Below are positions 5,201 through 20,300 of a DNA stretch of 64,000 nt, piece after piece. The DNA is from Phallusia mammillata (taxonomy: Eukaryota), in contig OZ281500.1 in the NCBI GenBank assembly GCA_965637545.1, positions 4,588,001 to 4,652,000 on the forward strand, given 5' to 3'. Position 1 is the first letter of the stretch. Each line of letters opens with the position of its first letter. The notes under the pieces were generated by a model that saw nothing but the letters and a program-made list of their open reading frames with translations, was not told where the DNA came from and did no database searches. The position numbers and the translations under genes were made by a program.

Positions 5201-5395
5201 ATAAGTGGAAGTTTAAATCTACTTCAAGTTTATGACTTTTTTCACATTCAGTGTTTTACCCTTCAGGCTAAGCCGGGATTGCTTCCTTAAACCATTAGGA
5301 ACCCTTGAAACTGCATAGCAACCAGCTTAACTATAGGACAAAGGCGTCGTTGTTGATATTCAAATTCTTCCTTTTATGACGTCATACAGGAAACG

Positions 5396-8300
5396 ATGAA
5401 ACTGATTGTCGCTTTGTTATCGGTTTTTCTGCTTGTCAACAATGGATCAGGTGAGATTTTTTTGCATGTTTGTCGCCAAATGACTTTAACAGGTAAGCTA
5501 GTCCGGTATTGGAAAATCAGCTTGAAGTAAAATCCAGCTTTGTAGATAATGCGAAGAGCTTGATATAAAAATGACGTGTGTATATCTTGCAAACTGTATT
5601 GTGAAATCATTGACATTCGTTGACACCTAAATTATTTTTTTAAGTCGCATTTTTTAGGGTACTCTGGACGCCTAAAATATTTTTTGTTTTGTTTTACGTT
5701 TCAGTCCTAAGTGTTTTGACCAGAGTTTAAATTTGAGGCCGTTGAATGAGGGTTCGGTCCGGATTCGGCCTTAAACTTCCATTAAACCGGAATTGATTCG
5801 GCCTCGACTTCACACTTGGCCTTATGCTGCATCTTCACCAACTTGTGGTCTAAATTCGGGCTTTATTTGTATAAATGGGTTCGGGTCGGGTTTCGGGCTT
5901 GTACTTTTGGGTTCGGACCTGGTTTGGACCTTAACTTCGGGCCCGCTTGAAAGTTTGTTTTTATCTAACGAGAAACTAACATATTAGGTTACAGCTGCCA
6001 TAGGAGGCAATTGCGACTCTGTCTAAGCTTTCCTGAAGAACCCGAAAACTTATTTACCTTAGGCAAACAAGTAGTCATATTTTCGAGACACTCAATTGAC
6101 CTAAAGTCACGTTGTGTTGTGAACATTATTGCATCGCGATAATTTTTCTTTAAATTACTTTTCGTTACTGTTTTTGCAAAGTGGGTCTGAAATTGGGGCC
6201 CGAACTCGAAAGTACATGAACGAAAACCGACACGACTCTAAAAAAAACAGACAAATCAAGCCCAAAAGTTAATAAAAAATCAGCAAAAATTACGCCTTGT
6301 GTGAAGTCAGGCCCGAATCATGTCCGTTATAAACTCAAGCCCGAAACCTGACTCGAAAAGCACGGACCGACTTGCAACTTTGGCAGTATTGGCTGTTTTG
6401 CATGTGAAACATTTAAAACGCAACGAAAAAATGTTTAAAATTCGCTGGATGCAGAGTCGTGTTTATTTACGGTAGATTTGCAGTAATGCCAAGTCAAGAG
6501 GTCACGGGAAATCAACGCTATTTGCCACAAAGTAAAGTTCATGTCCTTGATTTGACCTTCCAAGATAGACGACCAAATGCGCCTTAAAATGAACTTTCGG
6601 CTATAGCAAGGCCACGAAGCTTAGCTTGTAGTTTAATGGTCTATTTCGTCACGGTGTGATGACGAAATTAATTTTCAGATTACTATCGATGTTATTTTTT
6701 ATTGTTGTGGATAAAGCGTGATCAAGTGCTAAAGCTTTCAAAAAAATCGGAAAATACTCTATTCATTCGAAGTAAATGCGAAAAAAAGATAAACTACCTG
6801 TTATTTAAGCTGACAAAAAATAGCCACCTATTTTGATTCACGTATAGTGGTCCACATTGGTTAACCGAAATCAACGGTTAACAACCTGAGGTTCGCGGAC
6901 CTCCAATGGGCCCGTGAGATGGTTCTGGATCTAAAGGGTCATAAATGCAAAGCTTCTCAATGGGGTAAATTGTCCATAGACTTGAATACTTTTAGGGGGT
7001 ATGCAACAACTATACAAAAGGGAGCCACTAACCTATAGAGTAGATTGACCTAGGTGCTGTGTAGTATTTAAATGCTGCCATTTTTGCACATTTCTTCGCC
7101 TACATCTCATCAGTTTGTGTCGACATCGATAAAATTCTTGTTTGACTTTCTAACAACAGCCATACCACGGTGGTCCTGCTCTAACGTTGTTCCACCCGAA
7201 AACGGACGATTAGAGATCCTCTCATCCGGCGTATTCGCTAAAAATACGGCCATGCTGAGATTTCTCTGTAACGATGGTTACACTCTTAAAGGACAATGTG
7301 TTGCTCTCTGCGTAGACGGCATCGTTATGTATGGAAAACCGATTTGTGTTGGTAAGTTGTATAAGCAATCAGTTGTTAATTTTCGATAAAGTTTGTTTTG
7401 CTATCTATTCTATGATCAGTATTGTTGCCATATAGGGATGCCAATACCTTTCAAAGTGTAGTTCACCTACAAGTTCATCGCGTAAATGCAGCCCCTTATC
7501 CAAGTATAAATAGAATGAAAACTATTTGATTGGCATGATTAAGTTAACAATAAAGGCTCGGATAAAAGTTGTTTACCGTTGCAACTTGCTCAAATTGGAA
7601 AGACCAAATATTGCTGTTATAAAATGTCAACTTTTTTGGGGGTGACCAGCTTTTAAGTCGGTTTAAAGTTTAAACCATGGTATTTATTTGTAGACACGAG
7701 GAAATGCCCAGCAATAGAACACCCAACTCACGGCAAGATGCGCCAACTAACAAACGCTGAGTTGATGCGAAAAAGCTTTGACTACGACACCGATAAACTA
7801 CACGCAATGCTTACTGCAATGTCGCAAAGCGCTAGTGACCTTGCCACAGTCAGTGGCCGAATAAGTCTTGTCCGAGAACTCCGAACAACTTTGGAAACTA
7901 TTAAGGGTTTGGCAGGTCTGGCGAAATCAGCTGTGGCCAAACCCGGCCCTGTGATTGACCAAGCACCGCTGTACGCACTGGAGTGTGACGACGGGTACGT
8001 GCTGGATTCGGCGATATTTTATAAGTATTGTCAAGAAGGCAAGTTTCAACCAGTGGCCATGCCAACTTGTATTGGTAAGTTCTGTTGTGAAGCAAATTTA
8101 ATTTAATCATATTATTTACTTTTTCATGTAGTACTTTTCATGTAATGTAGTACTAAAAGGCCAGTGTTTGTCAAAAGTGCACATTGCGAGTTTATCAAGT
8201 ATATATTCGTATTTCCATCTCAGAAAAACTATCTTGCCCTCATCCGACCGCGCCGGGAAACGGTTCCGTAAATGTGTATCGAACGAATACAGTACGTGGA

Positions 8301-11300
8301 GAGTCGTCTGTGGTGAGGGCGGTGTTCTCATGCAACCGGGGATTTCGGTTGGACCCGCCCGAAAGCAAGTTGGCCCATTGTGGTTCGGACAACAGCTGGT
8401 CATCTGTCCCACCAACATGTACAAGTACGAATCAGCTGTTAAATATTGGTCTATGTAAATACATAAAGACGTATTTTTCGCAGTCATACAGAAAACTATG
8501 TCCATTCTGTCATTTTAAACTACGACTAAAAACTGCCATGAAACCACGCTTGCTTGAAGGCCAAAGTTACAAACTATTTTATGCAGTTGTGTATTTGTAA
8601 AACTTATTTTTGCTGACTCAGCAAAATTTGTCTAGTAAGTACGATATGGTCGGACCATGTAATAATGCATTACAGCATTGAAATAAGTTTTGTTTGATGT
8701 TTTGTTCTTGAAATTATCCAATTCAAGATGTCATTGCCCGCAGAGGCTTACAGTAGACCTCGCCACCAAATTTTAACCACATCATACAGCGTTTGCGGTG
8801 TGACAGTTCCGCCTTTTTGGACAAAAAACACCACACGCAGGTGTTAGCTGTAAATCTGCGTGAAAAGGAAGATCTTATTTCCGCCAAGTAGATTCTCCCG
8901 TTTCCTAAACTTAAGGCTCCTTTGTTTCAGCTTTGTCACCTTGAGATTAGGTCCAGCCACTAATCGTTGTGTTTTTGTCAAGTGCTCTGCCCGTGGGCAC
9001 CGAACCCTCCTTACGGACGTCTCGTGGCAAAGGGCGACACCCTGCGTCTAATTTGCAATCCTGGATACAAACTGGAAGGACCAGAAGAAATTTTTTGCCA
9101 AGACGATGGTAACTGGGGGACCCAAAACTCATTTTGTGTCCGTAAGTACCACTGCATATTCGAAATGTATCTGCAATAAAAAGACTTCCGGGGTTCCTCA
9201 AAGTTTTAAGCTAGGCCCACCGTATGTTAATGACAAAAAGAGGACGCATTTTCATTAAAGTTTCTTACTGCAACTTAAAAAAGTTTTGGACGAATTTCCT
9301 TATTTAATGAATACGGTTCAATTTTTTAGTTTTCTGTTGATTTTAACAAACAATAAACATGCTTTTGTTTTGTTATGCTTAATAATGGATTAACTAAGGT
9401 AAAAGTGTTAAAAAAAGAACTAGTTGTGAATATTTTAGCGTCCTCAGCCGACAACCTTCAACAAGAGGACGTATAGTAGGTCTATTTTAACCTATACGGG
9501 CCGGTGATTACTCTGGGGAGTTTGTCAAATATGGTATTCTGTACTTTATGTGAAATACGCGATGGATTTTTCATTAAAATTTACCGCACAATTACTTCAC
9601 TGAATTTTCACATGTCTATTGGCAACATCTGCTGATATTCATATTAAAAATTTAAAAATAGCTGACCATTACAGCAGAACTAAATACAGAAGCAGAAACG
9701 TAATTCATGTCGCTGCTATGCCGCGGTCATTTTTTTGCCTAATTTGGTGCCGCTACAATGACAGCCTATTTTTAATTAAAGGTTTGCCCTGCGTTACAAT
9801 TCCCACTGCAATGCGCTCATTCCTATTTTTAATCTCTGTAATTCAACGCATTGCCAATGTCTGTGTGTAAACGCTTTGCCACACCCTTTGCTGCCGCGCG
9901 TGGCCACGACAAACTAGCCGTTGGTGTGGCACAAAATCCTGCTGTAATCCAAATAATCCAATTACAACGGGTTTCATATTGCCCTGCGTTATAAGGCTTG
10001 TCCTTATGCAGCGGATTACATATTTACCAGGACTACTACCATGACGTAATTTTGCGGCCGCAATTCACGTATTAAGGATAAGACGTTTACGTTTTCCAAC
10101 GCTGGTGGTTAGTTGGTTTGTTTGACTGGTGTTTTTACCATAACATGGTGCTTTTTCGGTCTAAATGCCATTCAGTTACATAGCCGGTTGTGTGCAAAAA
10201 CCGTTTTGACCTTTGATTACTATACGCTTAGTATGAAACTTATCTTACATTGCGTTTGTCTAACACAATATTATAAAAGCGAAAATAAAAATGAGATGCG
10301 AACAGCAGGGAAAATCCTACTAATTGCTTGTAAATGACAAAATTTAAACTAACCGATTTGTTAATGTTAAGAATAGCGTATAAATTGTCTGCATTTAGGC
10401 GTCCCAACTTAAAACGACCTATTACGATTTAGGTAAAATATTTTTTGTTGAAAGCTGGTAGTGTGCTTTTAAGCAGTTTAAGCTTTAAATCAATAGGATA
10501 AAATATGACATTTTTGCAGTTGAGGTTCCTTGTCAAATTATTGAAGAAGTGCCAATTGGAGCTTTAATCTCCTCAACTCCTCTTAAGAAGTCGAAAAACA
10601 ATAAGACTTTGGAAGGTTGTCCTGGTAAGAGTCTGGAATTATACTTGGACAAAATCTACTGTTTCATGTGTGTTCAATACGCATTATCATACATTTGATT
10701 TTATGTGCAACACTTTACCTTTAAGATTTGGAATTTCATGACAGGTTACCGCCCATGTTACGCCCCTTCACACCCGCACCACGGCAAATACACTGTCATG
10801 GGTGACATCGAGCCCCCGTTGCCCCTTTCCCGAATTCGCTTTGGGTGCAGAGACGGGTACAGGCTCCGGGGAAGTCCTTCGGTTACGTGCGGACCGAAAG
10901 GAGAATGGACGAGCCAGTTTCCAGTTTGTGACAGTAGGTGGCGCAATTTCACTGATTTGTTGAAAAATATTTAGAACGTTTTTTACCATGGTGTTGTGTG
11001 GCAGTTGTATGGCAACGCTTTGGCAGAGGCATCCTGAAGGCGACCTGTTTTGTACGTCGAAACGTCGGTATAAAAGTGCAATTGCCAGAATGTTAGGTAG
11101 CAACAACTTTTGTATGGCACCGCTAGTTGTATTACTACTAAAAGCAAATCTAACTTTTATTAGAAATAACCTGCTACTTGTTGACTCCCGGGCCGAATAA
11201 TAAGAAAAAAGGTAACGTTTAGTGTTGTAGTTTTAAAACCAGTTCGTTTTCCGCAGAAATTCCGTCCTGTCCGCGGTTAAATCGCATTCCTAATGGTTTT

Positions 11301-14300
11301 ACATACTGGGCCAACTCGGTGCCTCAAAACGAGCATCTCTCCGCTCTGCTGTTTGTTTGTCGCAGAGGTTTCACACTTATTGGAGATCCGATCTTACTTT
11401 GTGTCAATGGAAAATGGATGGGAAGAAAACCAAGATGTGTGGGTAAGCGAGAATGCCTTGGTGTATGATTTCGATAGAAGTTACTTATTCAAATGGAATT
11501 TTATTAAATTTTATTAAACATTATAGGAATTGTTATTTCAGCAACAAACTTGTGTGTTGTGCGCAGACATGGGGCAATTCGTATTCGTCATTCGTATTCG
11601 AATGCATTCGAATACAGGTTTTGCCACCTTCGTGCTGTATTCGAATGATTTTGGCTTTCGTTCGATAGTGCATGAATACAATTCGAATAGTTGATGTTAT
11701 CTTTTGAACCAACAATATATGAATACAAAAGCTTAAGTAAATTTATTCGAATACAATTCGAATTGTTCTAGGTTTTTGCCAACCTAAGAATTTGCAAATT
11801 CGAATACACGATATTTTTTACGAATACAATTCGAATTGTTGTCGGCCTTTGGCAACGTAACAATTCGTAAAATCGAATACATGACTACATTTGTACGAAT
11901 ACAATTCGAATTGTTGTCAGCCTGTTTCTACGTAACAATTCGCAAAATCGAATACATGACTACATTTTTACGAATACAATTCGAATTGTTGTCAGCCTGT
12001 TTCTACGTAACAATTCGCAAAATCGAATACATAACTACATTTTTACGAATACAATTCGAATTGTCGATTACCTCCAGACTAGGAGTAGTCGAGATTCGAG
12101 AATATTTTGCTATATATTGTTGCCAAATAGATTCGAATACAATTCAAATTGACAGTGAATGTGACCTGATTTGACAAGTTTTTGATTATGTTACGAAACA
12201 ATGACACATAGAAGTTTAACTGTGACGTTACATAAATGGAATTGTGTTACAAAGCTTGCAACATTGGGTTGATCTCAGCACATGACAGGTGTAGCGTGTT
12301 CATGAAGCAAACATCTCATGTAAATTTGGTTAAATTTATGTTACGGAGACTTAAATCAGTCAAGCTGAGGTGGCAAACAAAGCTCGTTGGTTTACATTTT
12401 CACCAATAAATTTGCAATTCATAAACCCATGTTACATTTTGATCGAATACCTTTTAAGTTTCGGGGCGCTTTTATTTCTTTTATTTTCCGCAACTGCAAA
12501 TATCCGAATCGGTGCATTCGAATGCTATTCAATTGTTTGCTTCTTACTACAACTGAACAATTCGTGAATACAAATAACTAGAACTATTAATTCGAATACA
12601 ATTCGAATTGCTACTTCTCAAAAAGTACGAAGTATTCATGAATACGAATACACGCTGTGGGTTATTCGAATAGTATTCGAATTACACATTGTTGTTTTTT
12701 GGTCAACTATTCATGAATACTAATACTTGACACGTTTTATTCGAATACAATTCGAATTGCTGCCACCTTAATATTACAAAACAATTCGTGAATACGAATA
12801 CTTGCCTCGTTTTATTCGAATACCATTCGAATTGCTGTCACTCAAAAATTACCAAAGTATTCATGAATTCGAATACAGTCATGCAGGTATTCGTAAAGTA
12901 TTCGAATACAGGACGCGTGTATTCGACCCCCATGTCTGGTTGTGCGATTTACAAAATACAGCGATTTTAGTTTGTTTTGTTTTTTGTTAAAGATACGGAT
13001 ATTGCTCATTTGAAACACTTAGGCCCGTAGGTTTTAAAGCAATTGTTTGACGAAAGTTTAGGTTGTTTGTTTATTTTCTAGAGCGAGTTTTCTGTCCTCC
13101 AATCCAAGCTCCAATTAACGGACAGTTTGAAAATCCGATATCAAGGCCGGCTCCACAATCAACAGTTGTTCAGGTTTCATGCATAAGAGGTTATAAATTA
13201 ACGGGTCAAAGTTCATTTCTATGCATGACCTCTGGCCAATGGAGTTCAAATCCGCCAACCTGCGAACGTAAGATTGACAGGATAGAAGCGTGTTTGTACC
13301 GTTTTCTTTAAAAACGTTTTATGAGAGTTTGGTAAAAAGCATCGATGACTATACACTGTTATCAGCTACTGTGGTATACCTTTATCGGCTAAATATACAC
13401 TGTTATCGGATATGTAACCTGTGTTGTGATTCGGAACTATGGATAGTAATTGCCCATGGTTTTGGCTAAAAACAGTTCGAAAATGTCAACTTAAAAATAG
13501 GTTTCTACAATACAGTTCATCCATAGCCTGTAAACTTTAAAATACAGGGTGCTTGCTCGATTACAAGTGCTGTTTTTGGTTATTTTGTTTACTTGAGTTG
13601 TTTTATATTTGTAGCTGTATGCGAGATTCCTGCCAACTTGAAAAACGGCCGCATTTCGTTTCCAATCCACTTCGGACGATTTCCGAGTACTTTTGCACGA
13701 TTTCAATGCGACGATGGATTTGCCCTAATGGGTCAAGAGTTAATGATGTGCCGGGACGGGCAATGGTCACATGGTCTGCCTACATGTCAAGGTGAGTGTA
13801 CAAAATGCTGAGAATATATATTTTGCTAAATAGTGTTTGCCTGTACAATTTAACGCAAGCACTATGGACAGTTAGTGCAGTAAGATTGAGCATTTTATTA
13901 CCAACAATATCTGTACATCACTTGTTGGGATTAGCAACCGTGATGTACGTACGTATCGTTGAGTTGTAGCTATATTAATGGCATGTAGGCCTAAATGTGA
14001 ATCTCTGTTGACAAATTACACCTTGTCATTTTACTTATGAATCCTTAAAAAGAATTTTTTTGTGTCTTAGTTCTGTTTATTGGCGAAATCGGCCCTCAAA
14101 ACATACAGGTTTTTGTATTGGCTACCGGTATTTTCCTACTTTGTACGAGTTTGTTGATAAATTGTTTGAAAGTGGGAAGCAGTAGTGAAATTTATGCACA
14201 AGAGTCTAATTCTCATTAAATTAATGCTTTTTACAGCCGCCGTCGATGAGTGTCCGGAGCTAACTGCTCCAACCAACGGACAAGTTATTACGACGCAGAG

Positions 14301-16338
14301 CGATGATATCACGGGCGCTCGGTTTCTCTGCGACGCGGGCTTCGCTCTGATTGGTTCCCGTTGGATCACGTGCGACAAGACGGGGCGATGGTCGGGCGCA
14401 GTTCCCACGTGCAAAGGTAAACGTTCTTAGATATAATATCAATGTGTGTTTTTATTGCTAATTATATCAAAAAAGTCGTAATTTTCGTGCCAGTTTTTCA
14501 CTATTAAGTCGAAAAACATCGTGTCCAATGCTTAAGGGTAAAACAACAATTAAAGTAATGGATCAAAACCACAAACAGCAAAGAATGAACTGACAATCAC
14601 TAACTTTCTTTTTCGACTATATTTCTGTAAAACCAATGGACGATAAAATCCTTGGTTAAAACTGAAACAGTCAGTTTCAGGTAAAAGAATATAGATATAT
14701 TTAGCCTAAATTGCACCATCGGTTCTTGAAACGCTTGCAGTCATTTATTACAACTTAAAATTTATTAATGCTGATGTCCATCATTTCAACATTTTTGTCT
14801 TCGTTGGTATCTTACCGACAAACTGACCTTCAATGCAGTGGTCTGACCACCTTGGCCAGTTTTAAACACGCAAGTTCGAGCGTAATTTTAATCCTATCGC
14901 GATTTGGCTAAAATTTGCGCCCATTGTCTTCGCACGCATTGTTTACTGCTTATAATCGGATGCCTCTTTCTCGTAAGTGGGGCTTCCCGGTAATTTCGAC
15001 AGGATTAGCCTATTGTGTTGTTCACGGGCAACGGCTTAATGTCGTCCGATTGTAGCATGAAACGGTTGTTGTTTTCCGTGGATTTACAGAGCGTCTCGTC
15101 CGCGTGGGAGAAGGTTTAAGATTTTTTTCAGCAAAATATGTTGCAAAAGTGTCGCTGGTTACTTGCTCATTTTCGTCACGAACAGTTAATTATCCATGCA
15201 TATGTTTTGTAATCAAAATCAGGATGTATACAAAAATTTTCAAATGTGCCTACAGTGCAATAACTGAAAGTCCATTAAAGTGCCAACCTTGCATGTCAGC
15301 CAAAATCTTTCTTACAAACGTTGAATTTCCGTCCTAAATATTAGTCTTCCTTTTTCTTTTTATGTTTCTGCCACATTTCAATTCGGAGCGTTTATTCCGA
15401 TTCGTGAAACTCACACACAATATTAAAATCCAAACTCTCAGTCGTCGACTTGTTGAGAAATTGTAAACCACATGAAACAGATTATTTCAAGTACTGTTAA
15501 TTTGTTTGACATCTAAGGCCCCCGCTTGTACGCATTACAGATTGTGATCGAATTGCAAATTCTTTGTGGTCAGCGAACATCAAATATTGCAACGTAGCTG
15601 AACTTTTCCACCCGGTTAAACATGTATTGTTTTAAGCGCATCCTGTTATTGCGAACACCGATGGCTTTTAAAAGCCCTAAATGTTCGACAACTTACAAGT
15701 TTCAAATAGACGTCAATTTAAAGTTTAAAGTCACTGACACTTTTAACACGTAAGGTTACGCTGATCTAAAGCGTACTTTTTTTGCAGAAGAACTAAAATG
15801 CCCTGAAATTCCCCGAGTAGCTCATCAGAGCCATCTAGTGGTAAGCGACACGGTCACTGAGCTGGTAGTTACCTTCAGATGCGACTTTGGCTTCCAGCTT
15901 ATGGGACCAAGAGAACTTCGCTGCGTTGCACCCGGCACGTGGCAAGGAAACTTCCCAGAGTGCAAAGGTTTGTAGCCTACACGCCAACATATGAGTGTGA
16001 ACAATTAAATTAAAAAAAAGTCGTTTTTAAAAAATGCAGGCACAGTCATATTAGGCTATTAGCTGCGAATATTTAAACTCGCAAGCCAGAGGTGCTCACA
16101 CCTTTTTCTTTTGTATACTTCTGGGTACTTTTTATTATTTTCGCCCAAAAGTAAATTTTGCTCTCTAAATTTTAAAGCAAATCTACAGTTGGGTCTTATA
16201 CACTGAAAACATACATACAAATATATACACTGAAAACAACAGAGATTGTTATTTGTCGCATGTTATATATTTGCAGAGCGTGCCCCGGACATTGTGGATT
16301 CCGGTATATTTGAAGGTCCAATAGAAGGTCGAGGTTGA
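5396..16338 (+). CDS. Secreted multi-CCP (Sushi/SCR) protein, ~750 aa: signal peptide + 10 CCP domains + one 2-Cys mini-module + short tail; RCA/factor H-like architecture
   Basis: 13 exons, all introns phase 1: 5396-5450 (MKLIVALLSVFLLVNNGS), 7160-7351, 7694-8074, 8224-8424, 8983-9141 (AAG acceptor), 10520-10624, 10745-10933, 11257-11442, 13082-13267, 13615-13791, 14237-14416, 15788-15967, 16277-16338. Total 2253 nt = 750 aa + stop. Each CCP exon shows C..P.NG ... F.C..G(Y/F).L.G....C...G.W....P.C. No transmembrane segment or GPI-type tail. Confidence 0.9.
5721..6382. mobile_element. Degraded non-autonomous DNA element with ccga/tcgg subterminal motifs (copy 1 of 3)
   Basis: Ends cagagttt... 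/ ...gacttgcaactttg. Many ttcggg/cccgaa motifs. Segments are homologous to 29620-29961 and 46222-46545. No intact TSD. Confidence 0.6.
6872..7030. mobile_element. Highly degraded hAT/Buster-like MITE relic
   Basis: caacctgaggttcgcggacc... and ...aaaagggagccact resemble the ends of the cagtggttcccaac MITEs elsewhere in the window; no TSD. Confidence 0.35.
11564..12938. mobile_element. Non-autonomous hAT element, 1375 bp, in the intron between CCP exons 8 and 9
   Basis: TIRs cagacatgggg / ccccatgtctg (11 bp, perfect); perfect 8-bp TSD gttgtgcg (11556-11563, 12939-12946). The interior is saturated with gaatac/gtattc and caattcgaattg motifs. Confidence 0.92.
11821..12062. repeat. 75-bp tandem repeat (~3.2 units) inside the hAT element
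   Basis: cgaatacaattcgaattg recurs at 11821, 11896, 11971 and 12046, with near-identical sequence between copies. Confidence 0.9.
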
Positions 16339-17388: not shown

Positions 17389-20300
17389 ATGGAAGATGAG
17401 CAACAGTTAGTTAATTGCACCTACACCTTCTATAGGCATATGTAAGCTTAACTGCAAAGTGGAAAAAAGTTTGAAGGTTTTTAGTGTTGTACAAGTTGAT
17501 TTTTTTCAAACTTAGGAAATGCCTTTCAGAAAGGGATGTATGATAAATTTATGGTTAAAGCAGTTATAGGTTATTAAAAAATAACAACCTATAATTGTAC
17601 AATGATGGGTCACCCTTTTATCACTTGGTGCACTTTTATTGCGCCCGGTGCAACTTTATATCACTTGGTGCACCTTTATTTTACTTGGTGCACCTTTATA
17701 GTGCCCGGTGCAACTTTATATCACTTGGTGCAACTTTATTTTGCTTGGTGCACATTTACCTAGTGATATAAATGTGCACCAAGCAAGTGATATAAATGCA
17801 CACAATCCGCAATAAAGATGCATCAAGCGATATTAAGGTGTGCCAAGTGTTATAACGGTGTGCCAAGCTGTGGTAATAATGCACCAAGCGACTCAAATGA
17901 TCCAAGCGATCCTGTATATTTTAGATGCACCCTTCAGGATATTATAGTTTTTATTTTAACTATTGTAGAGTTGAACCATTAGGTTTTTTAGTTCAACTGT
18001 TGACCTAATTATCATTACAAATTGTGACTGCAGGCAGACTTGCTTGACAGAACAGCTGTCAATGCCTTTATCTATGACACCTCATTCTCCAGCATGATGC
18101 CTTCAGTTTCTACATTTTCATGTTGTGTATTAGCTATTTTCTAGAGCATAGGTCATAAGATTTGTTTCACATGTTGGACGAAAACAGCAATATAATATAT
18201 AGGTTTTTAACTATGTGCTAATCAAAATGATTTAATTGCGATTTTCTTGTTGCAGAGTTTGTGCATAAACATTACGATTTGCCATAAACTACCCTCTACA
18301 TTTTCTGCTCTTTTCTGACAAATTCACCATCCACTAGGAATTGTTTGTTTTTATTGTTGTCTTTGTTCAAAGTTTTCATTGTCTTATTTGGAGTCTGTTC
18401 TGTTCCATAAAGGTAAGGATTCTACAGAAAAACTTAGTTTGCAAATAAACTAATTTTTAGTGCACTATTCATGGTTTTGAATAATCTGAGCAAAAAAGTC
18501 GAAGCCTGTATTTGTGTGTACAACATGACTACATTGACCTGGTGATGACAATAGCACTTGTCGAAACGTAGTCAAGTTTCACACACAAATTTATACTGGC
18601 TCTGATTTTTTTTGCTCAAACTATTTTTTGTCTATTGGTTCATATATTTTATTTTGTTTTGGTAACCAGTATGTTACTGTTACTTATTGTGGTTTCTTTT
18701 GCAGTGAGCATTTCTTCCTAATATTTTAAAGTGATATGGAATTAAACCAATCTGAGAACCTACTGGGGTATGATATGTCTTTTTTCACACTTCTTATTTA
18801 AAGATACGTAAATATTTATCAAAATTTTAAAAAGATATATATAAGTGTACATTCTTACATGTATATATACATGCGATGTCCTTTCATAATGTATTTATAG
18901 TACTTTTGTATTTCTATGAAACTTTAAACTTGGTTAGATAATAGGAAACCTAAGGCTTAATAGTTCAGAATTTGTTTGCTCTAAAAAACAAACTTATGTG
19001 ACACCTTTTAATTGTTATGATACAATTATCAAGACTAATAAAAAATACAAATACACATTTTTTTGTTCTTCTGTAGCATTTAACAGAGCTGTTTTAAACA
19101 AAAGATTTATAAGTGATAATATATTGAAGGAAGTTTCATGATTTTATAAAAAAACGAACTATTTATTATTATTATGGAATAGATGTGTTGAGGCATGTTT
19201 TTTAAGCCTGTTGTTCCCAACAAACTGGAGTAAATTTTGGCTACACTATGATCACTGTTTTTGATCTGCATTTCCTAGATATAAATACTAAAGTGATGGG
19301 TGCAAATCAAAATTGTGTTTTAAATAAAATTTACCTCCATCACAGAATCGCTCGTGTAATAAATGGTGGCATTGCCGGCTTCACTGGTGTATGTGCAACA
19401 TTTCCAATTGATTTGTGCAAAACTCGACTACAAAATCAGTCAGTACAACATGGCCAACGGATGTACAAAGGAATGTAAGTGCTTTTATAAATTTTCTTGT
19501 CTTGTGTTTTCCGTTTCTTGGTATTTAAAAGTTCAAATGTTAGTTATTGTTAGTACTGCTTTTAAGTTTGAACTCTTGTGTTATTAAATTGTGCATTTTT
19601 TGTTAAACTTATAGCTTAAAATTGTGTTTGAAATGTTTCTGTAGCACAGTGGCCAAAACATTTAAAAAACATTGTAAACTACAAAATTTGGGTTTGACAC
19701 AAATCAAACACACAACTTTAAAAACATAGCGTTTTGAAACCTGAAAATTAGTGAAAACCGAATATCAAAAAGGGTCACTGACCTAGTCAATGAAAATATG
19801 AAAAAAATGCATGTATTTTGTTTGATTGGTTTTGTTCAACAACTTTACAGTTCAGTATTAGCTAGCTAGGCAATAGTGGTAAGATGTTCATACAATGCAT
19901 GCGCATATTCTTATGACTTGATCTGAACAGGAACTCATTGCATCCGCTTAATCGGTTGATCTTCCTATTTCACATACGGTCCATACTCATATCACAGCCT
20001 TGTGCAGTATTGTCCTGTGTTTATCTTTATTTTAATATTTGTGTCACGTTTTTAAGGGTACAAAGTTGTTCTTACACTATAATGGTTTTGTAATGGGACA
20101 TGCATGTCAAATTGTTTGTAGTACCGAGTTTTGTTTGACTTTTCAATAGACCCTATATACGGTGTGGGCTTTTCAAAACCAATTTCTTCATGATTATAAA
20201 ATGGTAATATGTACTTGCATTGAAGTTTGTAGTTAATGCATTTGTGGGAGCTATTGCATACGAATGTTTTGGCTGCTGTGTTACTTGCACATATATTGCT

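What the first reader, a model, noticed from the sequence alone, without database searches (positions are those of the whole stretch)
7694..8074. CCP domain with a ~60-65-residue amphipathic helical insertion in its hypervariable loop
Cys1-to-Cys2 spacing is 93 residues here (7705 to 7984) versus 22-32 in the other nine modules. All four Cys and the GY motif are kept, and the 381-nt exon is in frame with phase-1 ends. The insert (TNAELMRKSFDYDTDKLHAMLTAMSQSASDLATVSGRISLVRELRTTLETIKGLAGLAKSAVAKPGP) has no Cys, Trp or internal Pro. It shows 3-4 hydrophobic periodicity over ~45 residues and ends in a KPGP breaker. It lies after strand 2, the known CCP hypervariable loop, where insertions are normally only a few residues. 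It could be a coiled-coil oligomerisation arm, a membrane-inserting helical hairpin or a bait region mounted on a complement-type scaffold. I know of no described CCP like it. This is the best candidate for a new system in the window.
Basis: partly seen in the sequence, partly recalled or inferred. Interest (0 to 1): 0.85.

Follow-up and report, generated by a model that had tools for sequence, protein, structure and literature searches.

The report
Sushi module with nested helical hairpin
One of the ten 'sushi' (CCP) repeats of a secreted protein in a probable sea squirt carries about 63 extra residues in its variable loop; they are present in the mature mRNA and probably fold into a two-helix arm, a curiosity with no detectable relative and no known function.

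Summary
Exon 7694-8074 (+) is one open, phase 1-1 exon. It encodes a CCP/Sushi module with 92 residues between Cys1 and Cys2. In 111 other CCP modules sampled from this genome that spacing is 21-34, with two at 44-45. Spliced RNA contigs from three studies carry the whole exon, joined to CCP1 and CCP3, with no internal joint. The insert is therefore in the mRNA and is not a cryptic intron. It is single-copy in the 240-Mb genome and has exon-like GC, so it is not a transposon fragment. It matched nothing among 1.84 billion protein representatives, Pfam, PDB sequences or the ESM Atlas.

AlphaFold2, given paralogous CCPs as the alignment, places the insert between strands β2 and β3/4 as an antiparallel hairpin (helices 20-52 and 56-78, pLDDT 66-83). 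Heptad a/d hydrophobic periodicity exceeds shuffles (p about 0.003). The 100° hydrophobic moment does not (p about 0.2), and no stretch is hydrophobic enough to span a membrane.

Conservation across species could not be tested. A homodimer prediction gave no verdict. The best reading is a lineage-specific coiled-coil hairpin used as a docking or self-association arm; its function is inferred.

The closest known case is the 23-residue ordered loop insertion of helminth TGM-D3. I class this as a new variant of a known kind, of moderate interest. The scan has only noted this stretch and its gene on this same DNA.

The parts
5396..5450 (+). Exon 1: start codon and an 18-residue signal-peptide-like leader
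   Evidence: ATG at 5396 followed by a hydrophobic leader; joint 5447/50>7157/60 GT..AG in RNA contigs of X1, X2 and X4
7160..7351 (+). Exon 2: CCP1, which lacks the consensus Trp
   Evidence: Spliced to exon 3 in RNA contigs; aligns with other CCPs
7694..8074 (+). Exon 3: CCP2 with the nested insert (the finding)
   Evidence: Open frame; the whole exon lies in spliced contigs from three studies with 0 mismatches and no internal joint
7696..7749 (+). N-terminal part of the CCP2 core: Cys1 at 7705 and strand β2 (residues 13-17)
   Evidence: Alignment A1; AF2 strand E13-17 with pLDDT about 91
7750..7950 (+). The insert, about 67 residues (T19-P85), net about 63 more than in canonical modules
   Evidence: Columns that are gaps in nearly all of the 36 other CCPs; single copy at protein and DNA level; GC 0.50 against 0.30-0.39 in introns; no homologue found
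7753..7851 (+). Predicted helix A (residues 20-52)
   Evidence: AF2 with paralogue alignment, pLDDT 75-79; also helical in the single-sequence run; 8 of 10 a/d positions hydrophobic
7861..7929 (+). Predicted helix B (residues 56-78), antiparallel to helix A; contains R-E-L-R at residues 60-63
   Evidence: AF2 pLDDT 66-83; 7 of 7 a/d positions hydrophobic; generic helical-hairpin matches, Z up to 6
7930..8073 (+). Return linker (K-P-G-P...) and C-terminal part of the CCP2 core with Cys2 (7984), Cys3 and Cys4
   Evidence: Weak Pfam Sushi match over residues 95-125, E 0.11; alignment A1; AF2 strand E93-97 with pLDDT about 90
8224..8424 (+). Exon 4: CCP3
   Evidence: Pfam Sushi 1.5e-8; RNA joints
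8983..9141 (+). Exon 5: CCP4
   Evidence: Pfam Sushi 1.6e-9; RNA joints
10520..10624 (+). Exon 6: 35-residue non-CCP linker with two Cys
   Evidence: RNA joints 9141>10520 and 10623/4>10744/5; translation
10745..10933 (+). Exon 7: CCP5
   Evidence: RNA joints; translation
11257..11442 (+). Exon 8: CCP6
   Evidence: 5' joint from RNA; 3' end inferred from GT and phase
13082..16338 (+). Exons 9-13: CCP7 (13082-13267), CCP8 (13615-13791), CCP9 (14237-14416), CCP10 (15788-15967) and a short 20-residue tail exon (16277-16338, stop TGA)
   Evidence: Inferred from AG/GT borders, phase 1-1 and open CCP frames.

Best explanation
Exon 3 of a secreted protein (signal peptide, ten CCP modules, a short tail) in a probable ascidian encodes a complete CCP/Sushi module. 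Its β2-β3 hypervariable loop has been expanded by about 63 residues. The extra segment is translated as part of the mature protein. It most likely folds into an antiparallel two-helix coiled-coil hairpin of about 33 and 23 residues that projects sideways from CCP2. Its N and C ends return to neighbouring strands of the module, and the Cys1-Cys3 and Cys2-Cys4 bridges latch its base. A two-helix hairpin with broad hydrophobic seams is rarely stable alone. I therefore infer that it is a lineage-specific docking arm that packs against a partner: another copy of itself, a neighbouring module, or a ligand protein. That would give one module of an otherwise ordinary CCP string a new binding surface, as the extended hypervariable loop does in helminth TGM-D3. 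Shown here: the anatomy, expression, uniqueness and heptad pattern. Predicted: the helical hairpin. Inferred: the binding function.
For: Anatomy and expression:
- The open frame and splice borders are as described.
- Spliced contigs from studies P1, P2 and P4 hold the full exon joined to CCP1 and CCP3, all joints are GT..AG, and introns have zero depth.
- All four Cys and the G-Y motif align with 36 CCPs.
- The spacing is an outlier: 92 residues against 21-45 in the other 111 modules.

Origin and constraint:
- The insert is single-copy at protein and DNA level and has exon-like GC.
- The gene as a whole is under purifying selection: 10 synonymous against 4 non-synonymous differences between the genome and RNA contigs.

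Structure:
- AF2 with the paralogue alignment gives mean pLDDT 75.7, with E13-17, H20-52, H56-78 and E93-97, and 66-83 within the insert.
- The single-sequence AF2 run puts helices in the same places.
- The heptad a/d contrast exceeds shuffles, p about 0.003-0.005.
- Structure searches return only generic antiparallel helical hairpins for residues 17-86 and CCPs for the rest.

Precedent: a CCP hypervariable-loop expansion is used as a binding surface in TGM-D3 (PMC9163516).
Against: - No homologue of the insert was found anywhere, so no conservation supports either the fold or a function.
- The library did not return this protein itself, so close relatives may simply be absent from it.
- The AF2 alignment carries no information for the insert, and its pLDDT there is only moderate.
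- ESMFold2, run inside the complex job, gave pLDDT under 50 in at least one run.
- The homodimer prediction gave no verdict.
- The hydrophobic moment at 100° is not above shuffles.
- One of the two variants seen inside the insert is non-synonymous, T40I.
- The tissue, the partner and the oligomeric state are all unknown.
Confidence: 0.45

Rival explanations
1. The insert is a tolerated, functionally neutral loop expansion. The CCP hypervariable loop accepts insertions, and in a fast-evolving genome with well over a thousand CCP exons one module has drifted to an extreme length. The segment would be flexible or only transiently helical and do nothing specific.
For: No detectable homologue. Smaller polar loop expansions (C1-C2 of 44-45) exist elsewhere in this genome. 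ESMFold2 confidence was low. The gene has no close paralogue. The genome holds at least 1774 candidate Sushi exons.
Against: Both halves show a heptad pattern beyond shuffles. AF2 gives a consistent hairpin. The frame is open for 67 codons with exon-like GC in an AT-rich genome. The composition is not low-complexity or polar-repeat, unlike the L005 loops.
Confidence: 0.3
2. The insert is a proteolytic processing or bait loop. Cleavage inside it (for example at the R-x-x-R at residues 60-63) would leave the two halves of CCP2 held together by the Cys1-Cys3 and Cys2-Cys4 bridges, turning the protein into a two-chain or activated form.
For: The insert lies between Cys1 and Cys2, so the disulfides would latch any cleaved product. 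R-E-L-R and R-K motifs are present. The position is exposed and protruding.
Against: The motifs are short and expected by chance. Predicted stable helices are poor protease substrates. Nothing in the searches points to a known bait region.
Confidence: 0.08
3. The insert is a lipid- or membrane-binding amphipathic hairpin, a function added to a CCP much as in domain V of beta2-glycoprotein I.
For: The ESM-feature search of the whole exon lists Sushi_2 (beta2-GPI) clusters at 0.91. Net charge is +2. Helix B has a moderate moment, muH 0.51.
Against: Mean hydrophobicity is about 0, and there are no aromatic or cationic clusters. The moment is not above shuffles, p 0.19. Pfam shows no Sushi_2 hit. 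The atlas hits probably reflect the CCP core, since the insert alone gave no usable hit.
Confidence: 0.07
4. The insert is an artefact: a retained or cryptic intron, an assembly error, or a transposon-derived fragment that does not reach the protein.
For: Contigs drop rare isoforms, so a minor spliced form cannot be excluded.
Against: Contigs from three independent studies carry it with flanking introns removed and zero intron depth. It is single-copy, in frame, and exon-like in GC.
Confidence: 0.02

Closest known systems
Canonical CCP / Sushi / SCR module (Pfam PF00084)
   Same: Four Cys in the standard order, Pro after Cys1, G-Y after Cys2, a phase 1-1 single exon, and a position within a string of ordinary CCPs.
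   Different: 122 residues from Cys1 to Cys4 instead of about 55-60. The C1-C2 spacing is 92 against 21-34. Trp is replaced by Phe. The module falls below Pfam's gathering score because the profile matches only its C-terminal half.
Heligmosomoides polygyrus TGM-D3, with the related HpARI/HpBARI CCP-like domains
   Same: A CCP fold whose hypervariable loop carries an ordered insertion that forms part of a new protein-binding surface. [quoted passage not shown]
   Different: The TGM-D3 insertion is 23 residues long, extended, and wraps around the domain. Here the insert is about 63 residues, predicted to be a protruding two-helix hairpin. Sequence relation to the TGM family was not tested, and the organism is a probable tunicate, not a nematode.
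C4b-binding protein alpha-chain C-terminal oligomerisation domain
   Same: From my own knowledge: a helical segment of roughly 57 residues attached to a string of CCP modules that drives assembly of the chains. This is the closest functional analogy for a 'coiled-coil arm on a CCP protein'.
   Different: In C4BP the segment is C-terminal, not nested within a module, and is stabilised by cysteines; the insert here has none. The Pfam scan at E up to 1 listed no such family. Oligomerisation is not supported here.
Beta2-glycoprotein I domain V (Sushi_2, PF09014)
   Same: An aberrant CCP in which added segments confer a new binding function, in that case to lipid. Feature-space neighbours of the whole exon include Sushi_2 clusters, and weak Foldseek rows include beta2-GPI.
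   Different: From my own knowledge, domain V has a short insertion plus a C-terminal extension and an extra disulfide, not a helical hairpin. Pfam shows no Sushi_2 hit.

Membership tests
CCP / Sushi (PF00084) | Four conserved Cys in the order C1..C2..C3..C4 (bridges C1-C3 and C2-C4) | tested here: met
   C4, C97, C112 and C125 are invariant columns in alignment A1 with 36 CCPs. The disulfide connectivity itself cannot be tested here.
CCP / Sushi (PF00084) | Score above Pfam's gathering threshold | tested here: not met
   13.4 bits against a cut-off of 20.7, E 0.11. Only residues 95-125 match profile positions 27-56, because the insert splits the module.
CCP / Sushi (PF00084) | Conserved Trp between C3 and C4, and Gly/aromatic after C2 | tested here: inconclusive
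   G-Y after C2 is present. Trp is Phe here, a substitution also seen in several bona fide modules of this genome (L016, L017, L020, L021, L027).
CCP / Sushi (PF00084) | Module length of about 60 residues with a short hypervariable loop | tested here: not met
   122 residues from C1 to C4. The C1-C2 spacing is 92 against 21-34 (two at 44-45) in 111 other modules.
CCP / Sushi (PF00084) | Small beta-sandwich fold | tested here: inconclusive
   AF2 models strands 13-17 and 93-97 with pLDDT about 90, but the C-terminal third reaches only 61-74. Foldseek's best rows are CCPs but at E above 4. Atlas Sushi clusters align 57-59 residues at TM 0.34-0.36.
CCP / Sushi (PF00084) | One module per phase 1-1 exon within a CCP string | tested here: met
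   381 nt, phase 1 at both ends, flanked by CCP1 and CCP3 in spliced RNA.
Antiparallel coiled-coil / helical hairpin | Heptad a/d hydrophobic periodicity on two consecutive helices joined by a short turn | tested here: met
   a/d hydrophobic at 8/10 and 7/7 positions. Shuffles reach the two-half contrast in 0.3% of trials. AF2 gives H20-52 and H56-78. Only generic hairpin matches, Z 5-6.
C4BP-type oligomerisation domain | Sequence match to the family profile, and self-association | tested here: not met
   The Pfam scan at E up to 1 lists no such family. The homodimer prediction gave no verdict, so self-association remains untested.
Sushi_2 (beta2-GPI domain V, PF09014) | Match to the PF09014 profile | tested here: not met
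   No PF09014 hit at E up to 1; only feature-space neighbours at 0.91.
TGM / HpARI-type CCP with extended hypervariable loop | Ordered insertion of about 23 residues in the hypervariable loop that packs around the domain; homology to the helminth family | not tested
   No TGM sequence was fetched. The comparison rests on PMC9163516. The insert position matches, but its size and predicted structure differ.

The most novel reading that the evidence does not exclude
The insert is an autonomous 'nested coiled-coil' element that lets a secreted CCP protein self-assemble, or clamp a specific partner, through the side of one module. That would be a way of building CCP oligomers or receptors different from the terminal oligomerisation domain of C4BP, and a previously undescribed structural class of CCP module.
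Probability: 0.15. Interest if true: 0.55.

Novelty: new variant of a known kind. Interest (0 to 1): 0.38.

Why it matters
CCP modules are regarded as compact units of about 60 residues whose hypervariable loop varies by a few residues. The largest well-studied exception is the 23-residue loop of helminth TGM-D3, which turned out to be a functional binding surface. A module that carries a folded helical hairpin about three times that size would widen the known structural tolerance of the fold. It would also give a natural example of domain nesting in a disulfide-latched extracellular module, of interest for protein engineering and for how tunicates diversify their very large CCP repertoire. 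The value is limited because this is one orphan gene in one species, with no conservation or functional data.

Tried and rejected
**Homology of the insert: nothing found**
- phmmer of residues 11-96 against 1.84 billion representatives gave 0 hits at E <= 1e-3. The protein itself was not returned either, so this proteome is not in that library.
- The word-indexed search with the whole exon found nothing. Its length window of 69-220 aa excludes full-length kin.
- Pfam gave only noise: DUF3819 at E 0.035-0.11.
- PDB sequences gave only noise: LILRB1 at E above 0.1.
- The ESM Atlas gave no usable hit for the insert alone.

**Origin of the insert**
- Transposon or repeat origin is rejected: there is one copy at protein and DNA level.
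- Internal duplication of helix A and helix B is rejected: the local alignment scores no better than shuffles, p 0.43.
- No close paralogue exists that could show the pre-insertion state. CCP1's best non-self match is CCP8 of the same gene at E 0.006, and the CCP2 C-terminal half matches only itself.

**Structure and binding**
- Cryptic intron is rejected.
- The homodimer prediction (exon peptide x 2) gave 'no answer', score 0.02, with the partner's own fold uncertain. This is neither support nor evidence against binding.
- Foldseek against the PDB had no match at E <= 1e-3.
- The VIA wide search and the atlas-by-shape search gave only generic hairpins or CCPs, and never both in one protein.
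- The Eisenberg moment at 100° is not above shuffles.

**Not attempted**
- The spliced full-length protein was not used as a query. Orthologues of the whole gene therefore could not be sought.
- No eukaryotic relatives are reachable with the genome search.
Full report
**1. The observation**

The stretch 7694-8074 reads open in the frame that starts at 7696, for 126 codons. The other two frames are full of stops. It is bounded by ...tttgtag| and |gtaagt. The peptide starts with a Cys-Pro...His-Gly and a short strand. A long Cys-free stretch follows. It ends with the usual second half of a CCP module...Y-A-L-E-C-D-D-G-Y...C...G-K-F...P-T-C.

A regular-expression sweep of the window found eight further ordinary CCP modules downstream on the same strand, and the ORF list adds CCP1 upstream. 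In an alignment with the nine sister modules and 27 CCP modules from elsewhere in the genome, the four Cys are invariant columns. The G-Y after Cys2 is kept. The consensus Trp is Phe, as in several other modules. About 63 residues of this exon stand in columns that are gaps in nearly all the others.

In 112 distinct CCP modules from the window and the fetched loci, the number of residues between Cys1 and Cys2 is distributed as follows:

| C1-C2 spacing | Modules |
|---|---|
| 21-34 | 109 |
| 44-45 (polar loops in L005) | 2 |
| 92 (this exon) | 1 |

**2. Is it in the mRNA?**

Twelve public runs of the same (coded) organism hold the exon. I laid contigs of four runs from three studies on 5390-11389.
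- They cover only exons. Every intron bin has zero depth, so they derive from spliced RNA.
- They define the joints 5447>7157, 7350>7693, 8073>8223, 8424>8983, 9141>10520, 10623>10744 and 10933>11257, all GT..AG.
- One 2561-nt contig (X2) runs through all of these exons.
- Exon 3 is present from end to end, with no mismatch and no internal joint in X1 and X2. In X4 and X9 it is covered in overlapping pieces: X4 leaves a gap at 7916-7962, X9 leaves the first ~30 nt uncovered, and X9 shows two variant letters.

Contigs can hide rare isoforms.

**3. The gene**

With these joints, plus AG/GT borders and phase for the rest, the gene reads as follows:
- a signal-peptide-like leader (5396-5450);
- CCP1, then CCP2 with the insert, CCP3 and CCP4;
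- a 35-residue non-CCP exon with two Cys;
- CCP5 to CCP10;
- a 20-residue tail ending at 16338.

All internal exons are phase 1-1. No transmembrane segment is apparent, so the product is most likely secreted.

Differences between the genome and the RNA contigs are 10 synonymous against 4 non-synonymous, so the gene as a whole is under purifying selection. Inside the insert there is one synonymous difference and one conservative non-synonymous one (T40I), which is too few to judge.

Earlier notes of this scan call the genome a probable sea squirt. I did not test that. The genome is 240 Mb, and Sushi matches fall on eight large pieces. It holds at least 1774 candidate Sushi exons.

**4. Where the insert comes from**

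- Neither the 71-residue insert nor its 258 bases match any other place in the genome. It is not a transposon fragment or a repeat.
- Its GC content (0.50) equals that of the CCP parts of the same exon (0.49) and lies far from the flanking introns (0.30-0.39). This argues against a recently exonised intron.
- Helix A and helix B are not duplicates of each other.
- The gene has no close paralogue. CCP1's best non-self match is a module of the same gene at E 0.006, and the C-terminal half of CCP2 matches only itself.

**5. Relatives elsewhere**

- phmmer of the insert with short flanks against 1.84 billion cluster representatives found nothing at E <= 0.001.
- The word-indexed search with the exon found nothing.
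- Pfam, PDB sequences and the ESM Atlas gave noise only for the insert.
- The whole exon's feature-space neighbours are Sushi and Sushi_2 clusters.

The representative search did not return this protein itself. Its proteome is therefore absent from the library, and close relatives may be absent too. The honest statement is 'no detectable homologue in the libraries', not 'unconserved'.

**6. Structure**

AlphaFold2 on the single sequence was poor (pLDDT 53.6) but placed helices at 20-27, 32-53 and 56-79, between strands 13-18 and 92-97.

With the 36 paralogous CCPs as the alignment, mean pLDDT rose to 75.7:
- strands 13-17 and 93-97 reach about 90;
- the insert is modelled as two antiparallel helices, 20-52 and 56-78, at pLDDT 66-83;
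- a 13-residue Pro/Gly-containing return linker follows.

The alignment has no information for the insert, so that part of the model is an unaided prediction. ESMFold2, run inside the complex job, was not confident.

Independent of any model, the sequence shows heptad seams. Hydrophobic residues fill 8 of 10 a/d positions in helix A and 7 of 7 in helix B, against about 30% elsewhere. Shuffles of the insert reach the observed contrast in 0.3-0.5% of trials. The classical 100° hydrophobic moment peaks at 0.51 and is not above shuffles (p 0.19). Mean hydrophobicity is about 0.

Structure searches give generic helical hairpins for residues 17-86 (Z up to 6, for example SYCE3 and NDR/LATS N-terminal hairpins). 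They give CCP modules for the rest. No solved or Atlas structure combines both parts.

**7. What it most likely does**

The best-supported picture is a coiled-coil hairpin of about 35-45 Å protruding from the side of CCP2. The two disulfides of the module clamp its base. Isolated two-helix hairpins with broad hydrophobic seams usually need something to pack against. I therefore infer a docking arm that binds self, a neighbouring module or a ligand. This is an inference.
- The single test I could run, a homodimer prediction, gave no verdict and counts neither way.
- Membrane insertion is unlikely on composition.
- Interfacial lipid binding and a proteolytic bait or processing role (an R-x-x-R sits in helix B, and cleavage would leave a disulfide-latched two-chain module) remain minor possibilities.
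- A neutral, tolerated loop expansion is the main rival. It cannot be excluded without orthologues.

**8. Comparison with what is known**

The nearest described case is TGM-D3 of Heligmosomoides polygyrus. It is a CCP-like domain with a 23-residue structurally ordered insertion in the hypervariable loop that takes part in binding TβRII. [quoted passage not shown]

The present insert is about three times longer and is predicted to be a protruding helical hairpin, not a wrapping loop. From my own knowledge, C4BP's C-terminal helical oligomerisation domain is the closest functional analogy, and beta2-GPI domain V is another CCP decorated for a new function. Neither matches by sequence. Paper searches for nested or helical insertions in CCP or Sushi domains found nothing closer.

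**9. Verdict**

This is a real, expressed and structurally unusual CCP module, and so a new variant of a known kind. It is a neat structural curiosity with a testable hypothesis. It is nonetheless a single orphan gene without evidence of conservation or function, and not a 'new system'. Interest is moderate (0.38).

Noticed in passing
window 10520-10624 (+): A 105-nt phase 1-1 exon between CCP4 and CCP5 encodes a 35-residue non-CCP segment with two Cys (one near each end). It is confirmed by RNA joints but was not found by the CCP pattern sweep.
   Followed up: partly
L005 (G000:C4:7067611-7070772): Two neighbouring CCP modules carry a polar, Asp/Ser/Thr/Lys-rich expansion of about 17 residues in the hypervariable loop (C1-C2 of 44-45). 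Moderate loop insertions therefore recur in this genome.
   Followed up: no
window 5738-5916 (+), inside intron 1: Short RNA contigs in X1, X2 and X4 match only about 30-150 nt here and then run on into unlike sequence on both sides (loose ends at 5877 and 5907). This looks like a short repeated element or an exon-like fragment expressed from elsewhere.
   Followed up: no
window 10745-10933 and 11257-11389 (+): RNA contigs of X1 and X2 differ from the genome at 9 of 189 and 6 of 133 positions in exons 7-8, but at 0-1 positions in exons 2-6. Most listed differences are synonymous. This suggests divergent haplotypes with a breakpoint inside the gene.
   Followed up: partly
window 11450-11730, 11836-12174 and 12788-13020: The intron between CCP6 and CCP7 holds repeated units: three tandem copies of a peptide-like unit in the ORF at 11836-12174, and related 'IRI.FELLS'-type ORF fragments on both sides. 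This is probably a tandem or MITE-like intronic repeat.
   Followed up: no
window 19248-19478 (+): An ORF fragment carries a mitochondrial-carrier-like motif (..P-I-D-L-x-K-T-R-L-Q..). It is probably an exon of an SLC25-type carrier gene downstream of the CCP gene.
   Followed up: no
G000 as a whole: At least 1774 candidate Sushi exons were found, with large tandem arrays on C7 (about 12.70-12.75 Mb and 24.86-24.92 Mb) and C2 (about 19.05-19.08 Mb and 26.62-26.74 Mb). Some contain near-identical 72-88-aa open frames.
   Followed up: no
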